Of a stretch of DNA of 64,000 bases, positions 3,296 to 64,000 are shown piece after piece; position 1 is the stretch's first letter; every line of letters starts with the position of its first letter. The stretch is from Schmidtea nova. Taxonomy: Eukaryota. Below the pieces are notes generated by a model. The model saw nothing but the letters and a program-made list of their open reading frames with translations. It was not told the DNA's origin and did no database searches. The stretch is taken from the NCBI GenBank assembly GCA_044892505.1, contig CM097882.1:574182001-574246000 (forward strand), read 5' to 3'. Both the position numbers and the translations under genes were made by a program.

Positions 3296-3360
3296 TATTA
3301 ACTTTATTATTTCTCGTTCTGTGCTCATTTAAAAAAACTCAAAAAAATCAATATTCAAAA

Positions 3361-9995: not shown

Positions 9996-11379
<1,384 letters not shown>

Positions 11380-18300: not shown

Positions 18301-18309
18301 GAAGGGGAG
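18301..18309 (+). promoter_or_regulatory. Polypurine tract GAAGGGGAG
   Basis: Lies immediately 5' of the 3' LTR. Confidence 0.85.
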
Positions 18310-18429
18310 AGTTGGATATTTAAATTAACTGGTGTTTTAATAATTGAGTATTTTGGCACTTTTATAAAATTTTAATTAAATAAATCTATGAAGGAATTGC
18401 AGTCTCTTAAAACCGAGTTTGATTTAACT
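18310..18429 (+). repeat. 3' LTR of the Gypsy element
   Basis: Direct repeat of 13822-13941, followed by the TGTTT TSD. Confidence 0.93.
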
Positions 18430-34561: not shown

Positions 34562-34693
34562 NNNNNNNNNNNNNNNNNNNNNNNNNNNNNNNNNNNNNNN
34601 NNNNNNNNNNNNNNNNNNNNNNNNNNNNNNNNNNNNNNNNNNNNNNNNNNNNNNNNNNNNNNNNNNNNNNNNNNNNNNNNNNNNNNNNNNNNN
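34562..34693. other. Assembly gap (132 N)
   Basis: Run of N. Confidence 1.
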
Positions 34694-35224
34694 TATCTCA
34701 AAAATCATATTGCATCCCTATTTGCAAAAAATTACATCCATTTCATTCAATAACATTTCCCATACTAATACACAAGCAACATATATTTAAAATACAATAT
34801 ACACACATACACAGTATCATTTATTAGCATTCAATAGTTATGCTGGTGTGTTGGTTAGATTGACAACTGAGATCATTAGGATTTTATCTGTTAGGGTGAT
34901 CTCGCCAACATAAAAACATTTCCCCCGCTGACACCCATGATGTATCCCTAACTACTCATCATGTTGGTGCTGTGTCAACGTTGTGAAATGACAAGGCAGG
35001 TGAGCAACCTTTCGGCTACTATTCCCTTGTTTATTCACGGGTCCACCACTACCGATAGAAGGTGTTTGTGGCTTTCTTTCGGTCCCACTTATGCTCTTTA
35101 CTTTGCTCTAGGGTAAGTTAATTTCAGCGCATCTGCAGTTTAAATGAATCCGGGTTTTATCTACCTTCAATTTTCAGACATTCCACAAACAAACAAGACA
35201 AGTCAAATCATTCATTTTATACAT

Positions 35225-35788
35225 TTATTTATAGTTTAATAATACCGAGGGTCGGATTACATTTAGTAGTTCTTGCTCGGATAGACCACTGAGCAAGTCT
35301 ACCTCTATCCCTACGCGATCCGCATATGCGCGTCTCTCCCTACGCTTTTTCGCTCCCAAGCGATTCCGTCTCTTTGTTCGTTTCGAGCCTTCCAGAATTA
35401 TTGGGGACGTTGGGGTAGTTGTGATTGGGATGGTTTCTATTTCCGTTTGGGTACTTGTTGTCATCGATATGGTGTCCACCCACCGATTAAAGGTGCTAGC
35501 CCTGATCACTGGGCGTAATTGCTCGGTGATAAACTCCTGGGTTGATGCCCTCAAGTAATTCGACAGCTCCATCTTTAGTGCTGCTACCTCCCTAGCTTGC
35601 TCGTCGATTGTTCGTTCCGCCCTGTATCTGGCTTGCAGGATGGTTTTAACCCTCTCTGGGTTGAACCACGTGGCTTTAATTCGCTGGTGCTCGTCGTTTA
35701 GCTGCCGCAAGCGGTTTTCTAGGACTCGCGATCGTGCTTTATGCTCTTTTGCCTCTTGTTTGTAGTTCCTAGTTGGATGTTCACTCAT
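35225..35788 (-). CDS. LTR ORF-B (187 aa from ATG MSEHP): coiled coil plus Arg/Lys-rich C-terminal motif
   Basis: Intact in both LTR copies; YAG acceptor 2 nt before the ATG; AATAAA overlaps the stop. The ORF track's start at 35860 is a TTG. Confidence 0.7.
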   Translation of the reverse strand: MSEHPTRNYKQEAKEHKARSRVLENRLRQLNDEHQRIKATWFNPERVKTILQARYRAERTIDEQAREVAALKMELSNYLRASTQEFITEQLRPVIRASTFNRWVDTISMTTSTQTEIETIPITTTPTSPIILEGSKRTKRRNRLGAKKRRERRAYADRVGIEVDLLSGLSEQELLNVIRPSVLLNYK

Positions 35789-35979
35789 CTCTGTAAAATG
35801 TATCATTAATCGGGTTATGTATGGTTTGTCTGTTCTCTCAGTCACTATCTTTATTATCAAACAGGTGTTTCACTCTCAGATCGCCTCATACATTCAAAGA
35901 CATAACAAAACCCAAAAATTAATACATTTATTTTTAATACACATCAAATATTCCTTCGATGGATCGGTTTCCTTGCGAT

Positions 35980-36615
35980 TTAAATGAAGGGTCGTAATTC
36001 CTGATCGGCCGTGTTCTCGTTACGACGGATTCCGCTTTCATAGTATAACTCCGGGGCGGGGCTCCAACTTAACTTGTCCCGAAAGATGAATACCTCCCAG
36101 AGGCGTAGATCCTTGGGCTCGGGATGTTGATCTAGTGATACGCTTCCTGGCGCGTTTGAGTAGGCGAAGACTTCCCCAGTGTCGCCACACCGAGGCCTGT
36201 CTAGCAGTATGTATCCGAGTTGATGTAGCTCTTTTCCGGACGTCATTCCGGTACTTAGTAACCAGCGGGGTTGCTTTAACTCATCGAGGAATTGATAAAA
36301 CCATCGGGTATTTTCCGGCTTGATACGACCCGAGGAGGGTACCCAATCGGTATCTCCTTCCCACCGCAACTGTAGTCCAAACGCGCAAGCTGGGGTGCTA
36401 GCTGCTGAGCTCATATGGGCCCTCATCCATCGTCGTAGGTGGCGACGTGACACTTCGACAACTTTTCGGGGTGCTTCGTTCTCTCCTCTGATATTTGGGT
36501 TCGTATTTGGTCTGAGGACGGAGCGGGTGCGCCGTTTCTTACGGAGGATGGTATTCTCTATCTTTATAGGGTACGCGACCATCGGCTTCTCTTGATAACT
36601 CTCCAGTTTCACCAT
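35980..36615 (-). CDS. LTR ORF-A, 211 aa, unknown function, basic N-terminal motif RKKRRTRS
   Basis: Intact in both LTRs and conserved in the sister LTR. TATAAATA at 36673-36680, acceptor TTCTTTAG 7 nt before the ATG, AATAAA at 35927-35932. Confidence 0.8.
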   Translation of the reverse strand: MVKLESYQEKPMVAYPIKIENTILRKKRRTRSVLRPNTNPNIRGENEAPRKVVEVSRRHLRRWMRAHMSSAASTPACAFGLQLRWEGDTDWVPSSGRIKPENTRWFYQFLDELKQPRWLLSTGMTSGKELHQLGYILLDRPRCGDTGEVFAYSNAPGSVSLDQHPEPKDLRLWEVFIFRDKLSWSPAPELYYESGIRRNENTADQELRPFI

Positions 36616-37738
36616 GGTATTTCTAAAGAAGATGGTTGTTTTTAATCTACGGATTCTACGGCAGAACGGACCTATTTATATTAGTCAACCCACCCGTCTT
36701 AATTATGAAATTTTGTAGGTCCGAGGGGTACCTTCTGTGGTTTTGCCGGATCATTGTTGGTGGCTGGACGTGGGTCGTGTTAGATGATAGCTTGAACTAA
36801 TGTACTCCGCTTTTTATTTCGACGATTCAGCTACGCACGATTTGTTACAGTTGTTAATCATATCGCTATTATACTTAATATTCATCAATCAGGTTCAATC
36901 ACTCAACTACAACCGGTTTTATTTATTGGTAATACTATTTATCACATTCAATCTCATCAGTCGTTTTCGATTACTTCCTCATTTAACTAGTAATGATCAT
37001 GCCATGTCGGGTAATCCCCGTAAGTTCCTGGGGTCCTTACTCCCTGGGGTTCATCATTTTATCGGTTCTCAATGCCTGTAGTTTATTTATCATCTCTCCT
37101 GGCGACTAAACACAGCTGACAGAGGTTATCGATTATCCTTAACCCTTGATACTAGGTTCACTATGCTCGAACTCGTACGCGCTAATGTTGACATATACCT
37201 ACCCTCGTCGTCACCTAATTCATCTGCACTAATATTATTCACTGCACGTATATCCCTCGTCTAGACTTCGCCACGATATATATCCTTCCCATAAAACGGG
37301 CTTCACTTTGCGCTCGTTTACGACTACTAGTTTATACTCGATACCCTATCATTGTGATGCCAAACGTTTATATTAGATCATCTCTACCTTGATTTCGTTC
37401 ACGATCATTAGGTCTTACTCGATACCCTATGTGCATTCAACCCCTTCCGCTTTCCAAATATTTAATACACCTATGGTCCCGCCGCATCAGCACCTCACAA
37501 CCGAAAGGTTGTGTTGCGCTGAGAGGCCCCAAGAATCCGTCAGGCTGTTAGGCCTCCGGAAAACCTTATGGATTTTAATATGATTAACAATTATAATTAT
37601 GAGGGTTTAAAGCAACAATCGAACACACAACAATTACCTTTTATTTTTTCTCCAAGTTGGTTTTACAATGTTCTCAGTGCTCAACTGCAAGTCACACTTG
37701 GTAAAAAATGGCATTGTCAAATACTGATTTGACTTCAG

Positions 37739-37746
37739 TATTTATA
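37739..37746 (-). promoter_or_regulatory. Candidate LTR TATA box (TATAAATA); copy in the 5' LTR at 63893-63900
   Basis: Identical in the sister LTR (~30339-30346). A CCAAT in reverse orientation lies ~25 nt upstream, and a candidate donor AAAG|GTAATT follows at 37637 (63791). Confidence 0.55.
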
Positions 37747-38351
37747 CTCAACCGGTGTTGTTGGTTAGCCAATCAGCATCGAGTATGTGTGTATGTTTGC
37801 TTCATTTTTCATGTTGTCGGCTTTTTGCTGCCTAACTTAACTTGCCGATTTGTTTGGTTAATCATGCGGTAAGTTTTTCTTTGTCATCAATTTATTTTAT
37901 TTTATTTTTGTTTTTAGGTCTTTGGTGACATCCGCCCACGCGCTGTCATATTCAGATTTTATCTGCTTCGCATGAGTGAGTTTTGAAGATTTTTGTTGTT
38001 TTGATTAATATTTTATTTCTTTTAGATGTTGCCGCCTATTTTGTTACGCTTTGGTGTTGGTAATTTATTTTGTTGTTATTCTGTATTTAATTTATTTTAT
38101 TGATTGTATATTATTTTCAGATGCTGCTCGATTTGGCTGGCCCAACATCACTCGGGGTCCCCTAAAATTGCGTCCCGCAATTACATGCATATACCTATAT
38201 CAACATACATAAAAAGTTCGTGACAGAACTTACATGCAAAACCACATAAGGTGGTAGCTGTTATACCCATTTTTACACAAAGTCACACATTGTCATTGTC
38301 ATGTTTATATTGTTACACAGTTCAATGTTTCTGGCTCATAGGGGTTGATTT

Positions 38352-38876
38352 TCAGGTCCTTTCACTGGTTGCCTGCATTTCGTATCGGGCTTGGATTTGT
38401 CGTAGATGACTTCTCATCCTTTGTTGGGTTTTTGCTTCTCTTTTAGCACATCTACACATTATCGTTTGTTGTTGTTTGAGGCTTCTGATTCGATATAGGG
38501 TATACGTAATCACGATGATCAGGATGATTGTTAATATTGTCATTGTGACTATTCCAACGATGATCCATCTGTTTCGGATTTCGGATTCGATTTGGGTTTG
38601 ACCTTTGATTGGCTTTAGGTGATCTTGAAAGGTTTTATGGATTTCTCGGATCTTCTCGATTTGATTGAATAGGGTTTGTAAGGGTTTGCGATGATCATGA
38701 CTGATTCGCATTTGCCGGATCAATTGTTTCAAGTCTTCTCTGACTTCGTTTAGTTGTTTTTCGATTTCTTGGGATATCTCGTTTGACAGGGTTCTTTGGA
38801 TTTCGGTTGTTGAGCAGTTCATTATTGTTGTAGTTAACATAATCGTTAGGACTGATAGGGTTTTGAGCCAGATCAT
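38352..38876 (-). CDS. 174-aa accessory membrane protein (signal peptide, coiled coil, TM)
   Basis: Hydrophobic N-terminus MIWLKTLSVLTIMLTTTIM; TM WIIVGIVTMTILTIILIIVITYTLY followed by a basic tail. Confidence 0.75.
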   Translation of the reverse strand: MIWLKTLSVLTIMLTTTIMNCSTTEIQRTLSNEISQEIEKQLNEVREDLKQLIRQMRISHDHRKPLQTLFNQIEKIREIHKTFQDHLKPIKGQTQIESEIRNRWIIVGIVTMTILTIILIIVITYTLYRIRSLKQQQTIMCRCAKREAKTQQRMRSHLRQIQARYEMQATSERT

Positions 38877-38949
38877 TTCTGATTATTCTACTGATTAATA
38901 CCTGTTACATCGATTTGTACATTTTTACACACGGATTTTTCGCCTCTTT

Positions 38950-40110
38950 TTACACATCCGTTTCCTCTGGTTCATGGTACCCTTCGTCTTGGAGCTCTAT
39001 TGGTGGTGGTGGTATAAACGGTAACCATACCACTCTACTTCTCCACATTGCAATTTCATCTTGATACGTTCGAGAGATTTGTATCTCTTCATCTAACAGA
39101 TACTCCATATAGTCCGATTGTTCGCTCAGAGTTTCGATTTGTCTTTCCATCTCTTCCACTTTTCTCTTCAGGGCTTCTGTTTCTGTTGGTTCGGTTTCTA
39201 CTTCTATGGTTTCTTTCTCTGCTTTCAGGGTTATTATCTGCTGTTTCAGTTCTTCGTTTTCTTTCGTCAAATTCGTTATATTTTCCTCATACGCTCGGTT
39301 TGATTCCGCATGTCTTTCCTTCACAGCTTTCAGTTCCATTTTCTTTTGGGTCACCACCCCTTGATAACCATTTACATCTCTTTCTAGGCTTTCTTTTTCC
39401 CTGATCAACTTTTGTCTTTCCGCTTCCTCTTTCTGTCTAATACCTCGCATTTCTCCATTTATCATCTGTATTTGCCATTGCGTTTTCTTTAGTTCCTTTG
39501 CCTGTTCTCGAATAAATCGCTGTCGTTTTCGACTCCATTCTTTGTTTGCTTGTTCTTGTCGCTTTCTCTGTTCCAATTCCTCTTTCAATTCGTCTATCTC
39601 TTGATACAATTTCCAATCTTCGCTGTATGCTGTCTTTCTGATTATCTCTTTGGCTTCTTTATACACTCGTTTCGACTCCATTTTCCAATGTCTCGCTTGA
39701 GCCTTGATTGCTAGTATTTTTACCTCCATCTTTTCCTCTTGTTTCTCCCTCTCTTCTCTTCGCGTTTTCATCATATTTTTATAATGTTCTGCTTGTTTCC
39801 TCATTAACTGATATACCTCTTCTATCTTCTGTCGACTTCGTACATTCGTTCCTTTTAGCTTCTCTATTTGTGTTGTCAGTTGTACTATCTCTTTATTTAC
39901 TTCCTCGAGTTCTAGTTGATATAATTCCATTCGTCTTTCGCATTTCAGTTTTTCGTAGAAATTATTTGTCATCACTTCGTGCAGTTCTCTGGTTTTTTGT
40001 TCCACTTCCACTTTACATCTCCTTTCGATCTCCCTTTCTATTTCTTCTCGTTCGTTCGACATCTCGTTTCTCGTTTCATCTTCGATTACGTGTTCATTTG
40101 CGTTTTCCAT
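38950..40110 (-). CDS. 386-aa long coiled-coil (SMC/myosin-tail-like) accessory protein
   Basis: E/K/Q/R-rich helical heptads along the whole length; C-terminal WLPFIPPPP. Confidence 0.75.
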   Translation of the reverse strand: MENANEHVIEDETRNEMSNEREEIEREIERRCKVEVEQKTRELHEVMTNNFYEKLKCERRMELYQLELEEVNKEIVQLTTQIEKLKGTNVRSRQKIEEVYQLMRKQAEHYKNMMKTRREEREKQEEKMEVKILAIKAQARHWKMESKRVYKEAKEIIRKTAYSEDWKLYQEIDELKEELEQRKRQEQANKEWSRKRQRFIREQAKELKKTQWQIQMINGEMRGIRQKEEAERQKLIREKESLERDVNGYQGVVTQKKMELKAVKERHAESNRAYEENITNLTKENEELKQQIITLKAEKETIEVETEPTETEALKRKVEEMERQIETLSEQSDYMEYLLDEEIQISRTYQDEIAMWRSRVVWLPFIPPPPIELQDEGYHEPEETDV

Positions 40111-40199
40111 TCTGCAATTTACAAATTTACACTTGTTACACTATGCGTTTATTGTTGTTGTCGATTTTTACAATTTATTTACAGGGTCGTTCACTCTGA

Positions 40200-41612
40200 C
40201 TACTCTAACCATCCTTTCGTTGACTTCGTGTTCATCACTGTTGTACTTGCTTTCTTTTCGATCTCCAACTCTACATATAGGTTGTCGTCGTACAACATCT
40301 CCCACATTGTTTGGTGTGGTATGAATTTTGGTTCTCCTGTTGCTATTGAACATTCTGTGGTTGGTCTTTTGTAAGCTTCGTGCTTACCATCAATTTTGAA
40401 TACTCTCGCTATTGTTTCTTTCGAGTTTTTCACTCTCATTATAGCCTTTGTTTCTAGTGGCCATTCTAATATGTCGTCGTAACCAACTTTACACAACGCA
40501 AAGAATAATGACACATGCGTTTCCTTTCCTGATCCATCTCCATTTGGATAAATTCTCATTCGAACTTTGTATCCGTTTTTCCACAGATAAAATGGTGGAC
40601 TTGTTACCGACACTTGACTTCCTGCTTTTGCTGCTGCGAACTTGTCGTTGAAGTTCTTGATTTTCCATACATATGGTGCGACCGGTAAATTCTCGATATC
40701 CTCTGTATCTCGTATCCACATTTGATGTCGCACGTTTACTTCTTTTACCAATGTCTCTATGACTTTGATTTTCTCCATCATTTTCTCTCTGGTGAGCTCG
40801 AATTGCTCTCTCGTTTCCAGTAATAACTCCGTCATTACCCTCTGAGATTCGATTTCTTTTCCCAGCTTCTGTATGGTTTGTTCCATCCCGTTCAAATTTT
40901 CTGTTAACATCTCGGCGTGTTGTAACGTTTCCGTTTCCAAATGCTCTTTCATCTCTTTGTTCGTTTTCTTTACTGCACATCCTTGTTTACTCCATACGCA
41001 CTTTCTTGGTCTTGATTCGCATTGTTCCCAATGTTCTCTCAACATCACTTCTTCTCCGGTTCCGCAATTACTCGGACAAATTCCTCTGCATTTTCCACAC
41101 ACTTTCTCTTCTGTTACGTTGAGATGTTCTGTTTCGATTACTTCTCTCGTCTCTCTCTGTTCGCAGTATTGACACTCTATTATCTCTGCTTTGCACTCAT
41201 CCTTGTGATTTTTCGACTGCTTGATGGTTATCGTCTGTTGACACTTTTCACATATCGCTTTCTTGTTTTCACATTTCTCCAGATGTTGTCTTAACTCGAT
41301 TATTGGTCCTTTCCATTCACATGGTGGGTTTATACACTCTGTTTTTATCTTCCAGATCTCCTTTTGGATTGCTTTGTCTGATTTCGTCTCGTTGATTAGT
41401 AGTTTATCGTCACACTCTGGACACTTTCTTGTCTCACTTTCACTGATTATTTGCAATATACACTTGGTGCACATCCTGCATCCACATTCCGTTTGTCTCG
41501 GTTTTAACAGTAAATTTTTACACTTTACACACGTCACATTTACTCCCCATTGTCGATTTTCTCCTCTTAGAATCTCGATGGTTTGGTAATCTGCTTCACT
41601 TTCTGCTCTCAT
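40200..41612 (-). CDS. Full-length TRAF-like protein (RING, TRAF zinc fingers, coiled coil, MATH)
   Basis: CVKC...TECGCRMCTKC...CPEC RING; CINPPCEWKG...HLEKC fingers; MATH YVWKIKNF...SPPFY...GYKVRMRIYPNGDGSGKETHVSLFF...DDILEWP. Confidence 0.92.
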   Translation of the reverse strand: MRAESEADYQTIEILRGENRQWGVNVTCVKCKNLLLKPRQTECGCRMCTKCILQIISESETRKCPECDDKLLINETKSDKAIQKEIWKIKTECINPPCEWKGPIIELRQHLEKCENKKAICEKCQQTITIKQSKNHKDECKAEIIECQYCEQRETREVIETEHLNVTEEKVCGKCRGICPSNCGTGEEVMLREHWEQCESRPRKCVWSKQGCAVKKTNKEMKEHLETETLQHAEMLTENLNGMEQTIQKLGKEIESQRVMTELLLETREQFELTREKMMEKIKVIETLVKEVNVRHQMWIRDTEDIENLPVAPYVWKIKNFNDKFAAAKAGSQVSVTSPPFYLWKNGYKVRMRIYPNGDGSGKETHVSLFFALCKVGYDDILEWPLETKAIMRVKNSKETIARVFKIDGKHEAYKRPTTECSIATGEPKFIPHQTMWEMLYDDNLYVELEIEKKASTTVMNTKSTKGWLE

Positions 41613-41702
41613 TCTACAACAATATTTACATCAATTTCCCCATATTTTTGATTTTTTCTGGTTCTTTATTTACACGTATTTACACAATTTTCCGCTTATT
41701 CA

Positions 41703-42053
41703 CTATACATCCTCAGTTGAATCTGGCTCTGGATACACGTCTATCTCATTTACAATCCAGCTCGTCCAGCTATCTGGTATCTCTTCCTCTTCATGTCTCG
41801 TTAATCTGTCAATTTCCTCTGCTTGCCAGTTGTTCACTTCATTCAATGTTCGGTTCTCGTTCTGTAATTCGTTTATCTGTAGTTGTTGAATCTCGATTTT
41901 GTTCATTGCTTCGAAATTACAGTTGTAACTCTCGGTTAATAATTGCGTTTTTGCCGTCAGCTGGCTCTGTAATTCATTTACTGTTCTGGCTAGCAGGTCA
42001 CATTGCACTTTCCATCTTGCCATCATCGACATCTCGATATTTTCTTGATTCAT
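41703..42053 (-). CDS. 116-aa acidic coiled-coil accessory protein
   Basis: Same strand and composition as its neighbours; YAG 6 nt upstream of the ATG and AATAAA downstream. Confidence 0.6.
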   Translation of the reverse strand: MNQENIEMSMMARWKVQCDLLARTVNELQSQLTAKTQLLTESYNCNFEAMNKIEIQQLQINELQNENRTLNEVNNWQAEEIDRLTRHEEEEIPDSWTSWIVNEIDVYPEPDSTEDV

Positions 42054-42174
42054 CGTTTTCTAGATTATATACATCATTCTCTTTTTCTGTTTTTATGTTT
42101 TATAATATTTATACCCATACGTATACGGTTATGCATTGGTTTTTACACTACTATTTACACTCATATTCCACCCT

Positions 42175-45100
42175 CTATACGACTATCACTGGTTTTCCTT
42201 CGTACAGTTCCTCGTCTTCGATCTGTACCCACATCTCTTCGTGTTTCGATCGTCTTTTCAGCTCTTCTCGTACTTCTTTTGGTAGTTTTATGTTATAATT
42301 CATGACCTTTACGTCTGGCCATTTTACTGCTATGGTCTTATTTCTCATGCCATATCTCCAACATACTATCATGATCGTTATCAGTGGTATACACGCTATG
42401 AATACTCCCATGCTGATTAATCCCATTACTGTTTTTCCAATGCTCATTCTTGGAGTCTCACTTTGGTTTATCATCACGCCATATTGACCTTTCCATTCTG
42501 CTTCCCATTGTTCGTATTGTTGTTGTCTCCGTCTGACTTTTTCGATCACTTTCTCTGGTTCCCATTTTTCTTGTTGATTTGGTATTGTTTCTTCCTTCTC
42601 GTTTTGTTCTCTCTTCTGACTCAATTCTCGGAATTCTAACTTTTTGATTCTCCTCTTTATCGGTGTGTAGTAGGTTTCGCACCTTTCTTGTGGATTTCCT
42701 TGTGTATCCACTTCTTCAATTGCACACACCTCGTATTCTGCGTTTGTTTTCAACTTCCTCATTTCTACCTCGATTATTTCCTTTTTGTCATTTGATGTCT
42801 TTTGACAGTTTCGTGGAGACTTTCCCATACTGTTTGGCATTAATGTCCAACAGATTTCTAGGACCTTTTTATGGATCTTCCATATTATCAACGTTGTTGA
42901 TTCCGGTTCGTTTTCTATTGTCGTTCTTTCCGTTGTTGCCTGTTGAACTCCTTGACTGTTTGTTGTCGTGGTTCTTTTTGACTTTCTTTTCCTCTGTCGA
43001 CTTCCTCCCATTTCAATCGTTCTCGTTCCGTTAATTTGCTCTGGCGTCTTGTATAGTTTACATTCCGAGCTTCTTTGTATTATTTCTCTTATTCTTCGGA
43101 TTACGCAGATTTCGTAGGTTTGTCCGACTTCGAATCCATTTAGTTGAAACGGGATTCCTCGTTCTCTCGTTCTGCATTGCGGTATTATGTTGTTGGTCGA
43201 TACTCCGATGTATTTTCTCCAACACATCCCAATTGTTCTCCGACCAATATTTTTTATCTCCACGGTTACTACTTCATTCGCAATCGTTTCTTGATCTTGT
43301 TTCTTTCTTTTTGGGAACTCAATTATCTCCTTTGCTTGGAACACTTTACACTCGCTTGTTCCTGGTCTGTTTCCGTTTGCTGCCTTTTCCATGAGACATA
43401 GTTCATATTTTTTATCTGTCTCTATTTCTGTTATTTCGATTTCTTCATTTGTCTCTGCTTTTCGACTTTCTCTTGTTTCGCTGATTCCAATTACTTCATT
43501 GTTTCGTCCCCAACATCTTCCATTCGTTGTTCGTTGATCTTGGATGTTTACTAACGTCATCACGCTGATATCTATGTCCTCCATGATTCTCTTAATGAGG
43601 ATTAATATTAATGCTACACATATCAATTCTGGTTGGAATGTTAATTTGCCCGCTGGATTTTTGGTTATTCTTTCTTTCTCTGTTCGGTTTCTGATTCCTT
43701 CTTCTGCTTCAGATTGATTCTTCCCTTTCTCTGATTCCACTTCTGTTCTTCTCGTTGTCTCTTCGCTTCTTTTCTCAATCCATTTCTGTATCTTCAGCGC
43801 TTCCGTTGCTTTGTATAATTGGCATGCAGTTACTTGAGGTGCTTTTGGTTCTCCTCTCTGCTTTATTGCGCATATTATGTATGACTTTTCTTTCTCCAAT
43901 CCTTTGATTTGGATGACGTCTCGCTTCAGATCTGACAATATACACTTCAGCGTATCGTTTTTCTTCAGGTTTTCTTTCCAGCATATTCTTTCGTATACTT
44001 CGTTTCCTCTGATTATCTCTAGCGTGACGTATTGTTTCTTGGCTTCTCCTTGTCCGATGATTGTTATCAATATCGCGATACACAACATTTCTGGTCTCAA
44101 AAGTAGACTTCCTGTCCGTTTTCCATAATTCGTACGTTCGTCTTTTGTTCCACTGTTCTCTCGTTCTTCGGCTTCTCCTTTCTTGTCGTTTCTTGTTGGC
44201 TTTGGTTCTTCTTGTCTTTCTTTTTCATTATCCTCTGTTCTTTTGTTGTCATTGTCTTCGTTGTTCTTTTCGTTGTTACTTTTGTCGTCGAAGTCTCTGT
44301 AACCACCCCCTGGTCCTTTGAAAATGTCGTCCTCGACATTAATTCCTTCAATCAATCTTTCATACGTTTGAACCGCGAGTGTGCTAGACTCGAATTCCCG
44401 TATTTCCATGTCTTTGGATGGTTCTATGTCTTTTAGTCTACTTTGCTTGATCGCTTCTTTGGCATTTGCCCATTCATTCACATATTTTCTGAACAAGTCT
44501 TTCCATCTTCCCATTCGTTCCTGTTCCCTTGGGTTGTTCGTGAATTTCAAATCTCTTCTCTTCAAGAATTCTTCTACTATCTCTGGCTTTTTGTGTCTTA
44601 ATAACGCGCTTCTGATACACCAATTCTGATTCTGTTCCATATGGTCGTTGATCTTGAACACTGGTTCCTTGGTGATCGGATTCACCCATGTTAGTAATGC
44701 TCTCGTTTTCTCTATGTCGTGTATCATTACCGTCAGACTGAAATTCTTTACGTTATTTGCCAGGTATTCGATATCATCTTGTTTCTTGATGGACTTCATG
44801 AACTTGATCATCTCGAAGTTGTTCCACTGTATTGCGATATCTATGATGGAATTATTCTTTCCATTCTTCCCTTCGATTTTTGCTCCTGCTTCGTATAATT
44901 CATTTAGCACTTTCAACTTCGTCTTCTTTCTTGCTGCGATTATCATGATTGTATCTCCATTATCATCAACCGTATTCATATCTGCTTCGCACTTGACCAT
45001 TGTTTTCGTTATTTCTAACACTTCGTTTTCTTTCTTTCGACGTAATGCCCAGTGTATCGGCAATCTCCCATCCTTCGATAATAGGAATGCTACTGGTATT

Positions 45101-57060: not shown

Positions 57061-57938
57061 CCCGATTCCACTGTCTTGGAATACTGTACTAATTTTCTTT
57101 GCTTCTAGTTCACCACTTGTTTCTGAATTTGACTTTTCTTCTTCACTACTCTCTGTTTCGTTATCTCTTGATTCGTTTCTTGTTCTGTTTTCCCTGACTA
57201 GTTCACTGTCTATCGTCTCTACTTCGTTTTGTACTGCTAGATCTTCTGGGGTTTCTTCTTGGTTCTCTTTATTACTCGAATTATCGCTGATCTCTACTTG
57301 TTTGTTCTTTTGTTGCTTCGGCTTGTTACCTGTTCTTGTCCTTTTTGCTGCTTTTCTTTCTGCTTCCGTTAAGATTGGTATTATACCTGATCTTGTTTCT
57401 CGTCCCTCAATTTTGTCTATTCCTCAACTGCTTATATTCTCAACTGCTTTTCTACTCCGCTTTTGCTTTGCTTCTTCTTTGATTTGTTTCTTTTGATTGC
57501 TCTGACTGCTAGATTGCTTTGAATTGCTTGATTGATTTGTTTCCTTAAAACAAATAATCACTTACACGATACGTCCCCGTTATCGTGTTTCTCGTCCCTC
57601 TCACGGGTGTAGTCATAATTCATGAAGATCCCCATTTTTCCCATTTCCCTTGATTTTAAGTCTATTTAAATTATCTATGCAGTCGTATCAATTATCTATT
57701 CTTTATCAAATGCACCAATTACTTTTCCCCAGTTTCCCAATTACTTTGTCGCTCAGCGCTCTTATTATTCCCTTTACTTTTTCTCAGGCTTCTCTGGCTC
57801 TGAGTTCAAATCTCCCCTTATCTGTCAACTACTCTATTTCTCAACTATTCGCTTTATCTCTTGTTCGCACTACGTTTACTACTTCATTTCAATTCTCCTC
57901 TCTACTCACCTTTAATTTCAACTGACATCTCTCGTTGG

Positions 57939-58404
57939 CCTGTTGGGCTTTCCAATCAGCGCCTTTCATCTCACCTTTTATCTCGAACTCTGTTTCTCTC
58001 AACTTCACTCATTATCTCATTAGCCTGCTGGGTTTTCCAGTCAGCGCTTTTAATCTCACCTTTTACTTCTGCTTCATTATTCTCGACCTCAATTGTCGTT
58101 TCATTAGCCTGCTGGGTTTTTCCAGTCAGCGCTCTTATTATCCACCCTTTATCTCTTCACTGTCGACTTTTACCTGTTCTTTGCTCCGATGATCATCACT
58201 TTTGACCTGCTGGGTCTTCCAGTCAGCGTCCTCAATTTCACCACTTTATTGTTACTCCCTTTTATTCTCTCGATCTTTCCTGATCGTTTCCATTGACCTG
58301 CTGGGTTTTTCCAGCTAGCGTCTTTACCCCTTTACCTGTCTTAACAAACCGGTTTCATTTTACTCCCGTCGAATCTCATGGTCTGCTGGGTTTTCCAGTC
58401 AGCA
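57939..58404 (-). repeat. Six dispersed ~24-bp hairpin motifs (consensus RNA GCUGACUGGAAAACCCAGCAG) with unique ~60-75-bp spacers
   Basis: Copies start at 57939, 58024, 58108, 58206, 58297 and 58382 on the plus strand. Confidence 0.85.
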
Positions 58405-58730
58405 CCCTTCACTTACTCACTTTACTTTATTACTCCTTTGTATGCATACTTTATCATCATTAGGCCACATAATCAGCTTTACTCGCATTTATCAATACCC
58501 AGGTGCGCACCTTCAACTCTCACATTATTATCTCGGTTTCTTTCAACCCTTATTCCTCATTATTCGCTATTCATTTTCACTATTCATCATTTATCCTCAT
58601 TATCATTTATTCATCTCCATTATCGCTTATTGATCTTCACTATCCGGATAGTTTTATGCTTTATTTAGTCCTCATCTGCCTCACTTCGTCGTCTTTCTCG
58701 TGGGCTTTTACTCGATATTTTATTTCAAAC

Positions 58731-58958
58731 GAGAACTATGCTCACTGCTGAGAACTATGCTCACTAACGAGAACTATGCTCAATGACGAGAACTATGCTC
58801 ACTGACGAGAACTATGCTCACTGACGAGAACTATGCTCACTGACGAGAACTATGCTCACTGACGAGAACTATGCTCACTGACGAGAACTATGCTCACTGA
58901 CGAGAACTATGCTCACTGACGAGAACTATGCTCACTGACGAGAACTATGCTCACTGGC
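58731..58958. repeat. Tandem array of 12 x 19-bp GAGAACTATGCTCACTGAC; degenerate interspersed copies continue to ~59290
   Basis: Exact 19-nt period from 58731, then about nine further variant copies separated by short spacers. Confidence 0.95.
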
Positions 58959-59982
58959 AAAACATGGTTGTTATGATGGTTTTGCTTACTGATGGAAACT
59001 CTTTGCTCCGGGGCTTATGTTCCCCGATGAGAACTATGCTCACTGATGGTGACTACAGGAATTATGTTTCCTGATGAGAACTAAGCTCACTACGATGACT
59101 ATGTTTATTAATGAGAACTACGCTCCCTGATGAGGACTATGTTCGCTTGTCTTGTGTTTATTAATGAGAACTCTGCTCACTACGAGAACTATGCTCACTA
59201 TGGTGTTGTGTTTTATGACGAGACCTACGCTCACTAGGATGTTACGTTTTATGACGAGACCTATGCTCACTATGAGACCTATGCTCACGAACGAAAACTC
59301 GAAATATCATCTCTCAGTGGTTGCATGTGTTGCTTCGGGATGTTCCTCCCAGTGGTCACTTATGCTTCTTCGGAGAATCTATTGTCGCGTTTCGTTAAGT
59401 TCTATCTTTCAAGAACTATGGGCAAATCCTTTCTCTCTAGGACCCCTTTTATCATTTCCTTTCTTTCAAGGATTTCCTTTAACCTCGAGTTTTCCATTGA
59501 CTCGGTTCATCTGTTATACCCCTTTATTCTATTATCGATTCGTCAACCTTTCTACTTGATTTTACCTTATGCGAGCTGATTACGTGCCTTTCATCATATA
59601 CCACATTTATCCACTTTTAATATTCATTTCCTCACTCTCCTTCTCTACTGATCAGTTTATCTTCCTATTTTTATAGTTTTTCTGCGCGCGCCTAACCTCA
59701 TTGAGTTGTCCCTACCTTTCACCCCAACCAAAATATATAAAAAGATCGCATTGGTCCACTGATGCACGATGTGGTGATCAGTCACATCACAAGAGCTTTC
59801 CAATATCCGCGATTGGATCCCTTTCTACACATCTCGGGTGAGTTGATCAGTTGGTTCCCCCCAATGGGTGCTTAACGGACTACTCGTAGGTAGCTCATAA
59901 TTACTTAGGTCATTTTTACCAAATCATTTTTAAACCCTCATAATTTCAATAACAACTGCACTTGTTCCAAACTTTATTTCTA

Positions 59983-60441
59983 TTACAAGTACACTGTTAT
60001 TTTCTCGGATACGGGAAGGTTGCACATAGGACATCGTTCGTTTATTTTACATTCATTACAGAATCGAAAATGCCCACACGGCAACAACATTATCTGTATT
60101 TTGTTTATTTCACAGATGTAACACGTCAAATACTGTCTCGTATATTCGGTTGTCGTTCTTATCCACTCATCGTGTTTTGTTGCAATCTGTTGTTCTAGCC
60201 TGTGGCACTCGATATTCATTTCAGGGTTGTTTAATCGCTCTCTATACCACTGATATCGTGTTGCTGTATCCACTGTTATCTTATTCTCGCTTATGCTCAT
60301 CATTATTTCAGCTCTTTCTGTGTTGTTTGTCGGTTCGTGATATCCTCCTACCTCGAGTTGTTTTAACTTTCTCATTACTGTCTCCACCGCCTCGTTGTTT
60401 GTCTCGAAAAACGTTTGCATTTCTTTTATTTTGTTCTCCAT
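59983..60441 (-). CDS. 152-aa protein with a C-terminal IAP/MDM2-type C3HC4 RING
   Basis: CYICEINKIQIMLLPCGHFRFCNEC...CPMCNLPVSEKITVYL at the extreme C-terminus; CAG 3 nt before the ATG; AATAAA 5 nt after the stop. Confidence 0.85.
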   Translation of the reverse strand: MENKIKEMQTFFETNNEAVETVMRKLKQLEVGGYHEPTNNTERAEIMMSISENKITVDTATRYQWYRERLNNPEMNIECHRLEQQIATKHDEWIRTTTEYTRQYLTCYICEINKIQIMLLPCGHFRFCNECKINERCPMCNLPVSEKITVYL

Positions 60442-60970
60442 CCCCTGAATGGATTCTCATTAATTTTGTTATCGATTTTTATTTATCATTTATTATTCCT
60501 ATTCTATGGTAGCCCTACTGTTCGGTTTTTGTTGTTCTATTTCGCGCCACTGCGTATCCCCCCGTGTTCTTGAATGTCGCCCCGACATGATCATTGTTAG
60601 TTGCTCACACTCATACCATTTTCATGCACACTTTTCAGCATACTTTTACCTTACGTCATGCATACTTTTCATCACTTTTCATACTGTTATTCCACATACT
60701 ATTCCTCATACTTCATTCATCCCCATACTTACATTCCATTATCATTCATACTTTCATTCTCATGCATACTTTCATCACGTTCATCAATCTCATTATTTTG
60801 CACTCATACTTTTATTTATTATTTTTCAACCCGATTCGTTCTTGCTTCAGGACCCTCAAACCCTCTATTATTTACTTTACTTTTCCTCGCTAAATTCAAT
60901 TCATCCCGGTTCAGGCGCTCTAAACTGTCCGCAGATATCGAATTCACTTTTTCCCACAAAGATCGATTTA

Positions 60971-60988
60971 ATCCCGGCTGAGCCCCCA
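60971..60988 (-). promoter_or_regulatory. Primer binding site, tRNA-Pro type (TGGGGGCTCAGCCGGGAT)
   Basis: 6 nt from the 5' LTR end; 16/18 match to the known MLV tRNA-Pro PBS TGGGGGCTCGTCCGGGAT. Confidence 0.88.
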
Positions 60989-61378
60989 AATTTATGCTGG
61001 TGTGTTGGTTAGATTGACAACTGAGATCATTAGGATTTTATCTGTTAGGGTGATCTCGCCAACATAAAAACATTTCCCCCGCTGACACCCATGATGTATC
61101 CCTAACTACTCATCATGTTGGTGCTGTGTCAACGTTGTGAAATGACAAGGCAGGTGAGCAACCTTTCGGCTACTATTCCCTTGTTTATTCACGGGTCCAC
61201 CACTACCGATAGAAGGTGTTTGTGGCTTTCTTTCGGTCCCACTTATGCTCTTTACTTTGCTCTAGGGTAAGTTAATTTCAGCGCATCTGCAGTTTAAATG
61301 AATCCGGGTTTTATCTACCTTCAATTTTCAGACATTCCACAAACAAACAAGACAAGTCAAATCATTCATTTTATACAT

Positions 61379-61942
61379 TTATTTATAGTTTAATAATACC
61401 GAGGGTCGGATTACATTTAGTAGTTCTTGCTCGGATAGACCACTGAGCAAGTCTACCTCTATCCCTACGCGATCCGCATATGCGCGTCTCTCCCTACGCT
61501 TTTTCGCTCCCAAGCGATTCCGTCTCTTTGTTCGTTTCGAGCCTTCCAGAATTATTGGGGACGTTGGGGTAGTTGTGATTGGGATGGTTTCTATTTCCGT
61601 TTGGGTACTTGTTGTCATCGATATGGTGTCCACCCACCGATTAAAGGTGCTAGCCCTGATCACTGGGCGTAATTGCTCGGTGATAAACTCCTGGGTTGAT
61701 GCCCTCAAGTAATTCGACAGCTCCATCTTTAGTGCTGCTACCTCCCTAGCTTGCTCGTCGATTGTTCGTTCCGCCCTGTATCTGGCTTGCAGGATGGTTT
61801 TAACCCTCTCTGGGTTGAACCACGTGGCTTTAATTCGCTGGTGCTCGTCGTTTAGCTGCCGCAAGCGGTTTTCTAGGACTCGCGATCGTGCTTTATGCTC
61901 TTTTGCCTCTTGTTTGTAGTTCCTAGTTGGATGTTCACTCAT
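61379..61942 (-). CDS. LTR ORF-B copy in the 5' LTR
   Basis: Translation identical to 35225-35788. Confidence 0.7.
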   Translation of the reverse strand: MSEHPTRNYKQEAKEHKARSRVLENRLRQLNDEHQRIKATWFNPERVKTILQARYRAERTIDEQAREVAALKMELSNYLRASTQEFITEQLRPVIRASTFNRWVDTISMTTSTQTEIETIPITTTPTSPIILEGSKRTKRRNRLGAKKRRERRAYADRVGIEVDLLSGLSEQELLNVIRPSVLLNYK

Positions 61943-62133
61943 CTCTGTAAAATGTATCATTAATCGGGTTATGTATGGTTTGTCTGTTCTCTCAGTCACT
62001 ATCTTTATTATCAAACAGGTGTTTCACTCTCAGATCGCCTCATACATTCAAAGACATAACAAAACCCAAAAATTAATACATTTATTTTTAATACACATCA
62101 AATATTCCTTCGATGGATCGGTTTCCTTGCGAT

Positions 62134-62769
62134 TTAAATGAAGGGTCGTAATTCCTGATCGGCCGTGTTCTCGTTACGACGGATTCCGCTTTCATAGTAT
62201 AACTCCGGGGCGGGGCTCCAACTTAACTTGTCCCGAAAGATGAATACCTCCCAGAGGCGTAGATCCTTGGGCTCGGGATGTTGATCTAGTGATACGCTTC
62301 CTGGCGCGTTTGAGTAGGCGAAGACTTCCCCAGTGTCGCCACACCGAGGCCTGTCTAGCAGTATGTATCCGAGTTGATGTAGCTCTTTTCCGGACGTCAT
62401 TCCGGTACTTAGTAACCAGCGGGGTTGCTTTAACTCATCGAGGAATTGATAAAACCATCGGGTATTTTCCGGCTTGATACGACCCGAGGAGGGTACCCAA
62501 TCGGTATCTCCTTCCCACCGCAACTGTAGTCCAAACGCGCAAGCTGGGGTGCTAGCTGCTGAGCTCATATGGGCCCTCATCCATCGTCGTAGGTGGCGAC
62601 GTGACACTTCGACAACTTTTCGGGGTGCTTCGTTCTCTCCTCTGATATTTGGGTTCGTATTTGGTCTGAGGACGGAGCGGGTGCGCCGTTTCTTACGGAG
62701 GATGGTATTCTCTATCTTTATAGGGTACGCGACCATCGGCTTCTCTTGATAACTCTCCAGTTTCACCAT
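62134..62769 (-). CDS. LTR ORF-A copy in the 5' LTR
   Basis: Translation identical to 35980-36615. Confidence 0.8.
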   Translation of the reverse strand: MVKLESYQEKPMVAYPIKIENTILRKKRRTRSVLRPNTNPNIRGENEAPRKVVEVSRRHLRRWMRAHMSSAASTPACAFGLQLRWEGDTDWVPSSGRIKPENTRWFYQFLDELKQPRWLLSTGMTSGKELHQLGYILLDRPRCGDTGEVFAYSNAPGSVSLDQHPEPKDLRLWEVFIFRDKLSWSPAPELYYESGIRRNENTADQELRPFI

Positions 62770-64000
62770 GGTATTTCTAAAGAAGATGGTTGTTTTTAAT
62801 CTACGGATTCTACGGCAGAACGGACCTATTTATATTAGTCAACCCACCCGTCTTAATTATGAAATTTTGTAGGTCCGAGGGGTACCTTCTGTGGTTTTGC
62901 CGGATCATTGTTGGTGGCTGGACGTGGGTCGTGTTAGATGATAGCTTGAACTAATGTACTCCGCTTTTTATTTCGACGATTCAGCTACGCACGATTTGTT
63001 ACAGTTGTTAATCATATCGCTATTATACTTAATATTCATCAATCAGGTTCAATCACTCAACTACAACCGGTTTTATTTATTGGTAATACTATTTATCACA
63101 TTCAATCTCATCAGTCGTTTTCGATTACTTCCTCATTTAACTAGTAATGATCATGCCATGTCGGGTAATCCCCGTAAGTTCCTGGGGTCCTTACTCCCTG
63201 GGGTTCATCATTTTATCGGTTCTCAATGCCTGTAGTTTATTTATCATCTCTCCTGGCGACTAAACACAGCTGACAGAGGTTATCGATTATCCTTAACCCT
63301 TGATACTAGGTTCACTATGCTCGAACTCGTACGCGCTAATGTTGACATATACCTACCCTCGTCGTCACCTAATTCATCTGCACTAATATTATTCACTGCA
63401 CGTATATCCCTCGTCTAGACTTCGCCACGATATATATCCTTCCCATAAAACGGGCTTCACTTTGCGCTCGTTTACGACTACTAGTTTATACTCGATACCC
63501 TATCATTGTGATGCCAAACGTTTATATTAGATCATCTCTACCTTGATTTCGTTCACGATCATTAGGTCTTACTCGATACCCTATGTGCATTCAACCCCTT
63601 CCGCTTTCCAAATATTTAATACACCTATGGTCCCGCCGCATCAGCACCTCACAACCGAAAGGTTGTGTTGCGCTGAGAGGCCCCAAGAATCCGTCAGGCT
63701 GTTAGGCCTCCGGAAAACCTTATGGATTTTAATATGATTAACAATTATAATTATGAGGGTTTAAAGCAACAATCGAACACACAACAATTACCTTTTATTT
63801 TTTCTCCAAGTTGGTTTTACAATGTTCTCAGTGCTCAACTGCAAGTCACACTTGGTAAAAAATGGCATTGTCAAATACTGATTTGACTTCAGTATTTATA
63901 CTCAACCGGTGTTGTTGGTTAGCCAATCAGCATCGAGTATGTGTGTATGTTTGCTTCATTTTTCATGTTGTCGGCTTTTTGCTGCCTAACTTAACTTGCC

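What the first reader, a model, noticed from the sequence alone, without database searches (positions are those of the whole stretch)
34841..64000. Giant virus-like retroelement: enveloped Gypsy with a DNA-virus-style host-manipulation toolkit
Seen: one ~29.5-kb LTR element encodes the retro-machinery, a fusion glycoprotein and modules resembling Bcl-2, TRAF, IAP-type RING, ankyrin repeats, ubiquitin-like and FN3 surface domains. Known: these families control apoptosis and TNF/Toll-NF-kB signalling, and poxviruses, herpesviruses and baculoviruses capture such genes. Inference: a complex, possibly infectious endogenous retrovirus-like agent that blocks cell death and innate signalling. Caveat: size and layout recall the planarian 'Burro' elements, so the family may be partly described; the Env and expression features may still be unreported.
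Basis: partly seen in the sequence, partly recalled or inferred. Interest (0 to 1): 0.95.

Follow-up and report, generated by a model that had tools for sequence, protein, structure and literature searches.

The report
Intact copy of giant Burro retroelement
This is an apparently intact, very recently inserted copy of the giant 'Burro' Gypsy-type retrovirus-like element already described in planarian flatworms, carrying an in-frame viral fusion glycoprotein and TRAF-, IAP-RING- and ankyrin-type modules; it is striking biology, but its architecture and expression are already published.

Summary
A minus-strand LTR element starts at 34841 and runs off the window end. Its LTRs are about 3.3 kb and are 100% identical over the 3009 bp visible, giving a predicted length of about 29.46 kb. 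One uninterrupted 4961-codon ORF encodes, in order: Gag with three CCHC knuckles, a long spacer, a signal-like segment, a fusion glycoprotein (Pfam PF24664, E 1.7e-67), a membrane anchor, PR, RT, RNase H, IN, two ankyrin blocks, and an 870-aa tail with a C-terminal membrane segment. All catalytic motifs are present. Separate ORFs encode an IAP-type RING protein upstream and a full TRAF (RING, TRAF zinc finger, MATH) downstream. Bcl-2, ubiquitin-like and FN3 modules could not be demonstrated with any tool here. Arkhipova and Yushenova 2019 already described the in-frame env, TRAF, Ubl, BCL2 and ankyrin modules, and expression was reported in 2019 and 2021. New leads here are small. The main one is a 211-aa ORF inside the LTR under purifying selection (dN/dS 0.17). 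TRAF is also a separate downstream gene rather than a domain within ORF1. Infectivity and host manipulation remain inference.

The parts
60995..64000 (-). 5' LTR, cut by the window end (predicted to extend about 300 bp beyond base 64000)
   Evidence: 100% identical to 34838-37846 over 3009 bp; ends ...CCAGCA at 60995
60971..60988 (-). PBS-like site, 18 nt beginning TGG, 6 nt downstream of the LTR end
   Evidence: unique in the window; 0.01 matches expected by chance
57061..60970 (-). 3.9-kb leader holding the RING ORF and arrays of tandem repeats (19-mer x12 at 58729-58956; 85-mer x2.7 at 57926-58155); 29 ATGs lie before the RING ORF and 48 before the gag ATG
59983..60441 (-). Accessory ORF of 152 aa with a C-terminal IAP-type RING; no BIR detected
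   Evidence: Pfam zf-C3HC4_3 4.7e-9; PDB cIAP2/cIAP1/XIAP/ML-IAP RING domains 4e-6 to 1e-5
42175..57060 (-). ORF1, an uninterrupted 4961-aa polyprotein
56161..57060 (-). Gag (aa 1-300): Retrotrans_gag domain plus three CCHC zinc knuckles
53575..55380 (-). Conserved charged spacer (aa 561-1162). It is colinear, at 32-33% identity, with P0008, whose MATH domain sits where this copy has only about 12 residues
52183..53496 (-). Pre-env region (aa 1189-1626). It lies at the position where Ubl and BCL2 are published for relatives. Here there is only a low-confidence secondary-structure pattern: beta-beta-alpha-beta-alpha-beta at aa 1189-1268, and all-helical at aa 1434-1626
   Evidence: pLDDT 42.5; no Pfam, PDB or Foldseek support
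50347..52149 (-). Env module (aa 1638-2238): signal-like hydrophobic segment, a 563-aa ectodomain with 14 Cys, and a membrane anchor
   Evidence: Pfam PF24664 Monjiviricetes_fusion 1.7e-67, profile positions 4-579 of 653; hydropathy
49486..49758 (-). Aspartic protease (DTG present)
   Evidence: RVP 1.2e-8
47770..48945 (-). Reverse transcriptase (YIDD) and RNase H
   Evidence: (Ty3 Gag-Pol 4e-115)
46735..47445 (-). Integrase (HHCC zinc finger and DD35E core)
44794..46194 (-). Two ankyrin-repeat blocks (aa 3623-3790 and aa 3966-4089)
42178..44793 (-). 870-aa C-terminal region with no recognised family. It has an internal repeat of a hydrophobic motif and a strong C-terminal membrane segment (aa 4881-4899)
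41703..42053 (-). orf116, acidic and coiled-coil-like, with no recognised family
40200..41612 (-). TRAF-like accessory gene of 470 aa: RING, TRAF zinc fingers, coiled coil and MATH/TRAF-C
38950..40110 (-). orf386, highly charged and coiled-coil-like, with no recognised family
38352..38876 (-). orf174, a small protein predicted to be type-I membrane: N-terminal signal-like segment plus a membrane segment (hydropathy 3.16)
34841..38147 (-). 3' LTR, about 3307 bp, with termini TGTTGG...CCAGCA
35980..36615 (-). 211-aa ORF embedded in the LTR (second copy at 62134-62769). It is conserved with the ORF at 31448-32083(+) in a diverged neighbouring LTR
   Evidence: 67% identity without gaps; dN/dS 0.17 and codon-position bias 48/37/96, p=8e-8

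Best explanation
The region is a coding-complete-looking, very young provirus-like copy of the Burro family of giant Ty3/Gypsy (Metaviridae-type) LTR retroelements, a family described from dugesiid planarians.

Shown by sequence:
- LTRs and a PBS-like site.
- One 4961-aa polyprotein in the order Gag-NC, spacer, Env, PR, RT, RH, IN, ankyrin, tail, with all catalytic motifs present.
- Six further sense-strand ORFs, including an IAP-type RING protein, a full TRAF and a conserved ORF inside the LTR.

Inferred mechanism:
- A full-length A-rich RNA is transcribed from the 5' LTR.
- The leader carries 77 upstream ATGs, and four accessory ORFs are tightly packed after ORF1. I therefore expect spliced or internally initiated subgenomic messages, as in complex retroviruses.
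- In ORF1, the signal-like segment (aa 1638-1656) and the anchor (aa 2220-2238) would place the Env ectodomain in the ER lumen while Gag and Pol stay cytosolic. Signal peptidase and the element's protease would then release the parts.
- Replication is by tRNA-primed reverse transcription and integration.
- The RING, TRAF and ankyrin modules most plausibly act on host ubiquitin, apoptosis and NF-kB-type signalling.
- Env most plausibly serves transfer between cells of the animal, for example from differentiated tissue into stem cells, as Drosophila errantiviruses move from soma to germline.
For: - Anatomy.
- Family assignment from PMC6431247 section 7, which describes Burro as more than 30 kb with a 4873-5140-aa ORF1; Gag with three CCHC knuckles in S. 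mediterranea; env in frame between gag and PR, with hits to mononegavirus glycoproteins; MATH_TRAF_C either inside ORF1 or as an accessory ORF; ankyrin; and tandem repeats. All of these are matched here.
- The only relative of the gag-env spacer among 1.84 billion representative proteins is P0008. It is colinear with this copy and carries MATH inside the polyprotein.
- Youth: 0 differences in 3009 bp of LTR.
- Single unit: GC and strand skews are homogeneous across 36-64 kb.
- Expression of Burro in stem cells and gut, and its control by SMEDWI-2: PMC6884822 and PMC8532177.
Against: - No named Burro reference sequence was compared directly. Grohme 2018 is not held, and DNA of other copies was not fetched.
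- The host species is inferred only from the AT-rich flanks and the family's known range.
- BCL2, Ubl, BIR and dUTPase, published for relatives, were not detectable here.
- TRAF lies downstream of pol here. It is inside ORF1 in Burro-1 and upstream in the Girardia element.
- The 5' LTR end and the target-site duplication lie outside the window.
- An assembly gap lies 145 bp from the 3' end, and perfect LTR identity could partly reflect assembly polishing.
- Every functional step (polyprotein topology, splicing, host manipulation, cell-to-cell transfer) is inference.
Confidence: 0.85

Rival explanations
1. Strictly intragenomic retrotransposon. The env and host-like modules would be inherited baggage with no role in transfer between cells or in manipulating the host, and the element would spread only by retrotransposition inside the stem-cell lineage.
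For: - Thousands of genomic copies are reported (PMC6431247).
- In smedwi-2(RNAi) animals, Burro1 RNAi and RT inhibitors did not change the phenotype (PMC8532177).
- No particle or transfer data exist in the papers I could read.
- The env ectodomain has a single N-glycosylation sequon.
Against: - Env is kept open and scores 228 bits against a viral fusion glycoprotein profile, with a signal-like segment and an anchor in the right places.
- All accessory ORFs are open in a copy whose LTRs are identical.
- The modules are kept across diverged lineages, although in different positions (PMC6431247).
Confidence: 0.3
2. Assembly chimera or nested insertions: an ordinary Gypsy element into which host TRAF, RING and ankyrin genes or other repeats were joined by misassembly.
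For: - There is an N run at 34562-34693, 145 bp from the element.
- Burro-rich regions are known to be hard to assemble (PMC11410931).
- Perfect LTR identity is compatible with collapsed or polished repeats.
Against: - The ankyrin blocks and Env lie inside one 14.9-kb ORF with no stop.
- Composition is uniform across the element.
- All ORFs are on one strand and packed 73-121 nt apart.
- The same module set is published for independently assembled Burro elements.
- blastn at E<=1e-5 against the rest of the window matches only the neighbouring LTR fragment, with nothing matching the element's interior.
Confidence: 0.04
3. A domesticated or dead locus: a fixed, immobile remnant whose ORFs are kept for a host function.
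For: None specific. Host co-option of env and gag genes is common in animals (general knowledge).
Against: - The LTRs are identical, the PBS-like site is intact and all catalytic motifs are present.
- The family is reported as highly abundant and transcriptionally active.
Confidence: 0.03

Closest known systems
[quoted passage not shown] 2018; Arkhipova and Yushenova 2019, PMC6431247)
   Same: - A Gypsy-type LTR element of about 30 kb with multi-kb LTRs and tandem repeats.
- A single ORF1 of about 4.9 thousand aa.
- Gag with three CCHC knuckles.
- Env in frame between gag and PR, related to mononegavirus glycoproteins.
- TRAF/MATH, RING and ankyrin modules.
   Different: - MATH is not inside ORF1 here. 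A full TRAF (RING, zinc fingers, MATH) is a separate gene downstream of pol.
- ORF1 is 4961 aa here against 4873 aa.
- BIR, dUTPase, Ubl and BCL2 were not detectable with my tools.
- The one relative found, P0008, is only about 33% identical in the spacer, so this copy belongs to a different subfamily or to a different host species.
Burro-like element of Girardia (Dugesia) tigrina (PMC6431247)
   Same: MATH/TRAF is encoded by an accessory ORF rather than within ORF1, and the polyprotein is giant (5140 aa).
   Different: - The accessory TRAF ORF is upstream there and downstream here.
- There are two CCHC knuckles there and three here.
- Midasin homology is reported there and was not seen here.
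Insect errantiviruses (gypsy, ZAM) and the mosquito BEL/Pao element Anakin, which carries a chuvirus-derived glycoprotein (PMC7642597, PMC12440569)
   Same: These are LTR retroelements that captured a viral fusion glycoprotein. Anakin's comes from the same virus class (Monjiviricetes) as the Pfam family hit here.
   Different: - In those elements env is a separate ORF downstream of pol, expressed from a spliced RNA. Here it is in frame between gag and pol.
- They are 7-10 kb and have no TRAF, RING or ankyrin modules.
Complex retroviruses with accessory genes, including an ORF inside the LTR (the MMTV superantigen gene); general knowledge
   Same: There are several accessory ORFs between pol and the 3' LTR, and a protein-coding ORF lies inside the LTR.
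   Different: - There is no sequence relationship.
- The function of the LTR ORF here is unknown.
- The pol is of Metaviridae type, not Retroviridae type.
IAP, TRAF-binding, ankyrin and Bcl-2 homologues of large DNA viruses (baculoviruses, poxviruses, herpesviruses); general knowledge
   Same: The same host-derived domain families are carried by a mobile or viral genome.
   Different: The carrier here is a retroelement. None of the activities has been tested, and Bcl-2 is not demonstrated in this copy.

Membership tests
Ty3/Gypsy LTR retroelements (Metaviridae) | Long terminal direct repeats with TG...CA ends | tested here: met
   100% identity over 3009 bp; termini TGTTGG...CCAGCA
Ty3/Gypsy LTR retroelements (Metaviridae) | Primer binding site next to the 5' LTR, polypurine tract next to the 3' LTR, and a target-site duplication | tested here: inconclusive
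   The PBS-like TGG 18-mer is present. The PPT is only a short purine run. The duplication cannot be tested because the 5' end lies outside the window.
Ty3/Gypsy LTR retroelements (Metaviridae) | Pol domain order PR-RT-RH-IN, and RT closest to Ty3-type | tested here: met
   Pfam domain order; Ty3 Gag-Pol 7q5b at 4e-115 over aa 2706-3543; catalytic motifs
Burro giant retroelements | Total length of about 30 kb with one ORF1 of about 4.9-5.1 thousand aa | tested here: met
   about 29.46 kb; 4961 aa against PMC6431247
Burro giant retroelements | Env in frame between gag and PR, related to mononegavirus glycoproteins | tested here: met
   PF24664 1.7e-67 at aa 1639-2249, between the CCHC knuckles (aa 240-291) and PR (aa 2435)
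Burro giant retroelements | MATH/TRAF and ankyrin modules | tested here: met
   TRAF is a separate downstream ORF here
Burro giant retroelements | BCL2-like and Ubi2/SUMO-like modules upstream of env | tested here: inconclusive
   No Pfam, PDB or Foldseek hit. There is only a compatible low-confidence secondary-structure pattern at the equivalent position.
Burro giant retroelements | BIR and dUTPase-like motifs | tested here: not met
   No hit at E<=10. These motifs are reported for some members only, so they are not strictly defining.
Burro giant retroelements | Direct sequence homology to a named Burro reference, and a dugesiid host | not tested
   No reference was fetched (see the steps left out). 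P0008 is colinear but carries no name.
Errantivirus-type enveloped Gypsy elements | Env as a separate ORF3 after pol, of baculovirus F type | tested here: not met
   Env is inside ORF1 and matches PF24664, not an F-type family
TRAF family | N-terminal RING, TRAF zinc fingers and a C-terminal MATH/TRAF-C domain | tested here: met
IAP family | At least one BIR domain; a C-terminal RING is optional | tested here: not met
   The RING is IAP-like, but there is no BIR. It is therefore an IAP-type RING protein, not an IAP.
Bcl-2 family | Bcl-2 helical bundle with BH motifs | tested here: inconclusive
   Pfam Bcl-2 was not reported anywhere in ORF1 or in the accessory ORFs scanned, at E<=1 over aa 1751-4961 and those ORFs and at E<=10 in the tiles. 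Profile-profile comparison and fold tests need an alignment of natural copies.
Fibronectin type III | Seven-strand beta sandwich matching fn3 profiles | tested here: not met
   Only Fn3_ELFN at 0.05-0.17, below the cut-off. Foldseek on the low-confidence model gave nothing.

The most novel reading that the evidence does not exclude
Burro elements would be the Metaviridae counterpart of complex retroviruses. On this reading, the 211-aa arginine-rich protein encoded inside the LTR and kept under purifying selection (dN/dS 0.17) acts as a regulator of the element's own RNA or transcription. The giant polyprotein would use a signal/anchor pair to thread Env through the ER membrane in the manner of a flavivirus polyprotein, a way of expressing env not known from other retroelements. 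I found neither point in the papers I could read.
Probability: 0.2. Interest if true: 0.6.

Novelty: already known. Interest (0 to 1): 0.25.

Why it matters
Burro elements are the largest known LTR retroelements and a rare case of a retroelement that combines a captured RNA-virus fusion glycoprotein with host-type ubiquitin, apoptosis and signalling modules. A copy with identical LTRs and every reading frame open is a good natural template for describing how such an element is organised and expressed. It is also useful for annotating planarian assemblies, where these repeats break contigs. The family, its in-frame env, its accessory domains and its expression are already in the literature, so the finding adds one member and a few details rather than a new kind of system.

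Tried and rejected
1. Close relatives in protein databases.
- The whole ORF1 found only generic Gypsy pol hits.
- The env word search found nothing.
- aa 301-1500 against 1.84 billion representatives gave a single hit, P0008.
- Exact look-ups of seven proteins: six window ORFs were absent; P0008 is held, as a nameless UniParc entry.

2. Bcl-2, Ubl, FN3, BIR, dUTPase and midasin.
- Pfam tiling at E<=10, PDB phmmer searches and a two-sequence profile were all negative.
- A weak GP41 hit on orf174 and weak DOCK_N, BSD and MIT hits are below the cut-offs and are rejected.

3. Structure route.
- Two single-sequence AlphaFold jobs gave pLDDT 33.6 and 42.5.
- Foldseek on them gave no match below E 0.1.
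- No alignment could be built because no homologues are available.

4. The second LTR ORF (35225-35860) is not conserved in the neighbouring LTR and has no ATG at its start, so I treated it as probably not a gene.

5. Antisense ORFs of 120-343 aa have no family and are rejected as by-products of strand composition.

6. tRNA and Rfam scans of the window were empty.

7. Grohme 2018 could not be read.

Full report
**1. Observation**

The window splits into an AT-rich left part (23-36% GC) and, from about 36 kb, a block of 38-43% GC. That block has a strong and uniform strand bias: the sense (minus) strand is 41% A.

Direct repeats at 34838-37846 and 60992-64000 are identical at all 3009 positions, and the right-hand one is cut by the window end. 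A diverged LTR fragment at 29943-32174(+) aligns from LTR position 4 onward. Together with the terminal sequences this fixes the LTR as TGTTGG...CCAGCA, running from 38147 down to 34841, about 3307 bp. The element is therefore on the minus strand. The target-site duplication cannot be checked.

Six nucleotides inside the 5' LTR there is an 18-nt stretch beginning TGG. It is unique in the window, as expected for a tRNA primer binding site. The window holds no tRNA gene or Rfam family.

**2. Coding content**

ORF 42175-57060(-) has 4961 codons and no stop. The other two sense frames of the same stretch carry 476 and 226 stops, so chance is excluded.

Pfam and PDB searches place the following along the ORF:
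- Retrotrans_gag at aa 50-145.
- Three CCHC knuckles at aa 240-291.
- A viral fusion glycoprotein at aa 1639-2249 (PF24664 Monjiviricetes_fusion, 1.7e-67, profile positions 4-579 of 653).
- Retroviral protease at aa 2435-2525.
- RT and RNase H at aa 2706-3097. Ty3 Gag-Pol gives 4e-115 over aa 2706-3543.
- Integrase at aa 3206-3442.
- Ankyrin blocks at aa 3623-3790 and aa 3966-4089.

Short textbook motifs are all present: DTG, YIDD, TDAS, HHCC, DD35E and CCHC. I took these patterns from general knowledge, not from a tool.

Hydropathy shows three features: a signal-like segment at aa 1638-1656 immediately before the glycoprotein match; a strong membrane segment at aa 2220-2238 right after it; and another strong membrane segment at aa 4881-4899, near the C-terminus.

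The other sense-strand ORFs are:
- A 152-aa protein upstream of gag. Its C-terminal RING is closest to the RINGs of cIAP2, cIAP1, XIAP and ML-IAP, and it has no BIR.
- Four ORFs packed 73-121 nt apart after ORF1.
  - orf116.
  - A 470-aa full TRAF with RING, TRAF zinc fingers and MATH.
  - A charged 386-aa protein with no family.
  - A 174-aa protein with a signal-like N-terminus and one membrane segment.

**3. What could not be confirmed**

- Pfam in 250-aa tiles at E<=10 reports none of them. The only trace is Fn3_ELFN at 0.05-0.17, below the cut-off.
- PDB sequence searches of aa 1101-1640 and aa 4090-4961 are empty or insignificant.
- The region has essentially no homologues, so only single-sequence AlphaFold was possible. 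Both models are of low confidence (pLDDT 42.5 and 33.6), and Foldseek finds nothing below E 0.1.

One point is suggestive only. The low-confidence model has a beta-beta-alpha-beta-alpha-beta stretch at aa 1189-1268 and an all-helical stretch at aa 1434-1626. These lie in the order and position (after the MATH site, before env) where PMC6431247 places Ubi2/SUMO and BCL2 in Burro-1.

**4. What it is**

PMC6431247, section 7, summarises Jurka's GYPSM1 (2007) and Grohme et al.'s Burro-1 to Burro-4 (2018) and adds HHpred annotation. It describes:
- Gypsy-like elements of more than 30 kb, in thousands of copies.
- An ORF1 of 4873 aa in S. mediterranea and 5140 aa in the Girardia (Dugesia) tigrina element.
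- A typical Gag with three (Schmidtea) or two (Girardia) CCHC knuckles.
- MATH_TRAF_C, Ubi2/SUMO, BCL2, BIR and ankyrin modules, and a dUTPase-like motif.
[quoted passage not shown] The element here fits that description point by point.

Independent support comes from the single relative of the gag-env spacer found among 1.84 billion representative proteins. This is P0008, an 882-aa protein carrying no name. It is colinear with aa 561-1065 and aa 1078-1162 at 32-33% identity, but it carries a MATH domain where this copy has about 12 residues. Its MATH is 31% identical to that of the downstream TRAF gene here. So the same module is an ORF1 domain in one lineage and a separate gene in another.

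Expression is also published. Burro elements are among the most active elements in stem cells (PMC6884822). BURRO1 RNA is gut-enriched and is de-repressed on smedwi-2 knock-down (PMC8532177).

The statement that Env and expression may be unreported is therefore not supported.

**5. How it most likely works**

Shown: the anatomy above, and the absence of any LTR difference. The latter means either a very recent insertion or homogenised repeats in the assembly.

Inferred:
- The 3.9-kb leader has 29 ATGs before the RING ORF and 48 more before the gag ATG, and four ORFs follow ORF1. Simple scanning of the full-length RNA can hardly serve them all. I expect spliced or internally initiated messages, as in complex retroviruses.
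- The signal-like segment and the anchor that bracket Env give an even number of membrane crossings. The Env ectodomain would therefore face the ER lumen while Gag and PR-RT-IN stay in the cytosol, with signal peptidase and the element's protease separating them.
- From what their families do, the RING, TRAF and ankyrin modules would act on ubiquitin-dependent cell-death and NF-kB-type signalling.
- By analogy with Drosophila errantiviruses, Env may carry the element from differentiated cells, where Burro RNA is seen, into stem cells, where an insertion must occur to persist.

None of these steps has been tested.

**6. Rivals**

- A purely intragenomic life with functionless env and accessory genes is possible (0.3). 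It is disfavoured because all frames are open and the modules are retained across diverged lineages.
- Misassembly or nested host genes is unlikely (0.04). Env and the ankyrin blocks sit inside one 14.9-kb ORF, composition is uniform, and the module set recurs in independently assembled elements. An N run at 34562-34693, 145 bp from the element, does show that the assembly struggled nearby. I did not try to fill it.
- A domesticated locus is unlikely (0.03).

**7. New leads**

- The LTR holds a 211-aa ORF at 35980-36615(-), repeated at 62134-62769.
  - The diverged neighbouring LTR carries an ORF of exactly the same length.
  - The two are 67% identical and 80% similar with no gap.
  - dN/dS is 0.17, and differences fall 48/37/96 by codon position, p=8e-8.
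  - By contrast, the LTR-wide alignment, at 70.7% identity, takes 2321 columns for spans of 2232 and 2263 nt, so it holds many gap columns.
  - The protein is arginine-rich at its N-terminus and has no Pfam or PDB relative.
  - This is a real gene inside the LTR. Its function is unknown, and a regulatory role is a guess.
- TRAF as a complete downstream gene, the small membrane protein orf174 and the C-terminal membrane segment of ORF1 are details I did not find in the papers available to me. They may be in Grohme 2018, which is not held.

**8. Steps left out, and a slip**

This is why copy-number, conservation and phylogeny tests are missing.
- No contig looked human.
- Slip: while planning I wrote out, from memory, a short signature pattern for a Bcl-2 homology motif. 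I stopped, used it in no call, and it appears in no note and nowhere in this report.

**9. Verdict**

This is a real and well-preserved member of a remarkable but already described family. Novelty is low and interest is 0.25. The most novel reading not excluded is a complex-retrovirus-like regulatory gene in the LTR together with membrane-threaded expression of Env from the polyprotein (probability 0.2).

Noticed in passing
window 35980-36615(-), 62134-62769(-) and 31448-32083(+): A 211-aa ORF embedded in the LTR is conserved between two diverged LTRs: 67% aa identity, no gaps, dN/dS 0.17. It has an arginine-rich N-terminus and no known family. It is a protein-coding gene inside an LTR.
   Followed up: partly
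window 29943-32174(+): A diverged Burro-type LTR fragment (about 71% identity to LTR positions 4-2266). It converges on the main element and is preceded by a purine-rich run. The last ~1 kb of the LTR, and any internal part, are missing or unrecognisable.
   Followed up: partly
window 34562-34693: A run of 132 N lies 145 bp outside the 3' end of the element. I left it as it is.
   Followed up: no
window 57061-60970(-): The leader is unusually long (3.9 kb), with 77 upstream ATGs and several tandem arrays (19-mer x12, 85-mer x2.7, and related 36-54-mers). Their role is unknown.
   Followed up: partly
window 38352-38876(-): orf174 has a signal-like N-terminus, a heptad-like stretch and one strong membrane segment. 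It may be a second small membrane protein of the element. A weak GP41 Pfam hit (0.004) is below the cut-off.
   Followed up: partly
window 42364-42420(-) and 43351-44373(-): ORF1 ends with a strong membrane segment (aa 4881-4899). It also has an internal duplication of a hydrophobic motif about 154 aa apart (E 8e-6 between the two halves).
   Followed up: partly
window 13822-18429(+): A small (4.6 kb) unrelated Gypsy-type LTR element with 120-bp LTRs that are 99% identical. Its protease, RT and RNase H matches lie on more than one ORF, so its pol is broken at least once.
   Followed up: partly
window 10171-11379(+): An intron-less tubulin-like ORF of 402 aa (Tubulin 4.8e-52, Tubulin_C 1.4e-44). 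It lacks the first ~30 profile positions, so it is either a host gene exon or a retro-copy.
   Followed up: no
window 19557-20846(+), 22060-23514(+), 27067-27840(+): Other transposon remnants: a hAT dimerisation domain, a further reverse transcriptase, and DUF4371. The surroundings of the element are repeat-rich.
   Followed up: no
window 2929-3855(+): Direct repeats of 145 bp (two adjacent copies) and 95 bp (two copies 397 bp apart) in the AT-rich left flank.
   Followed up: no
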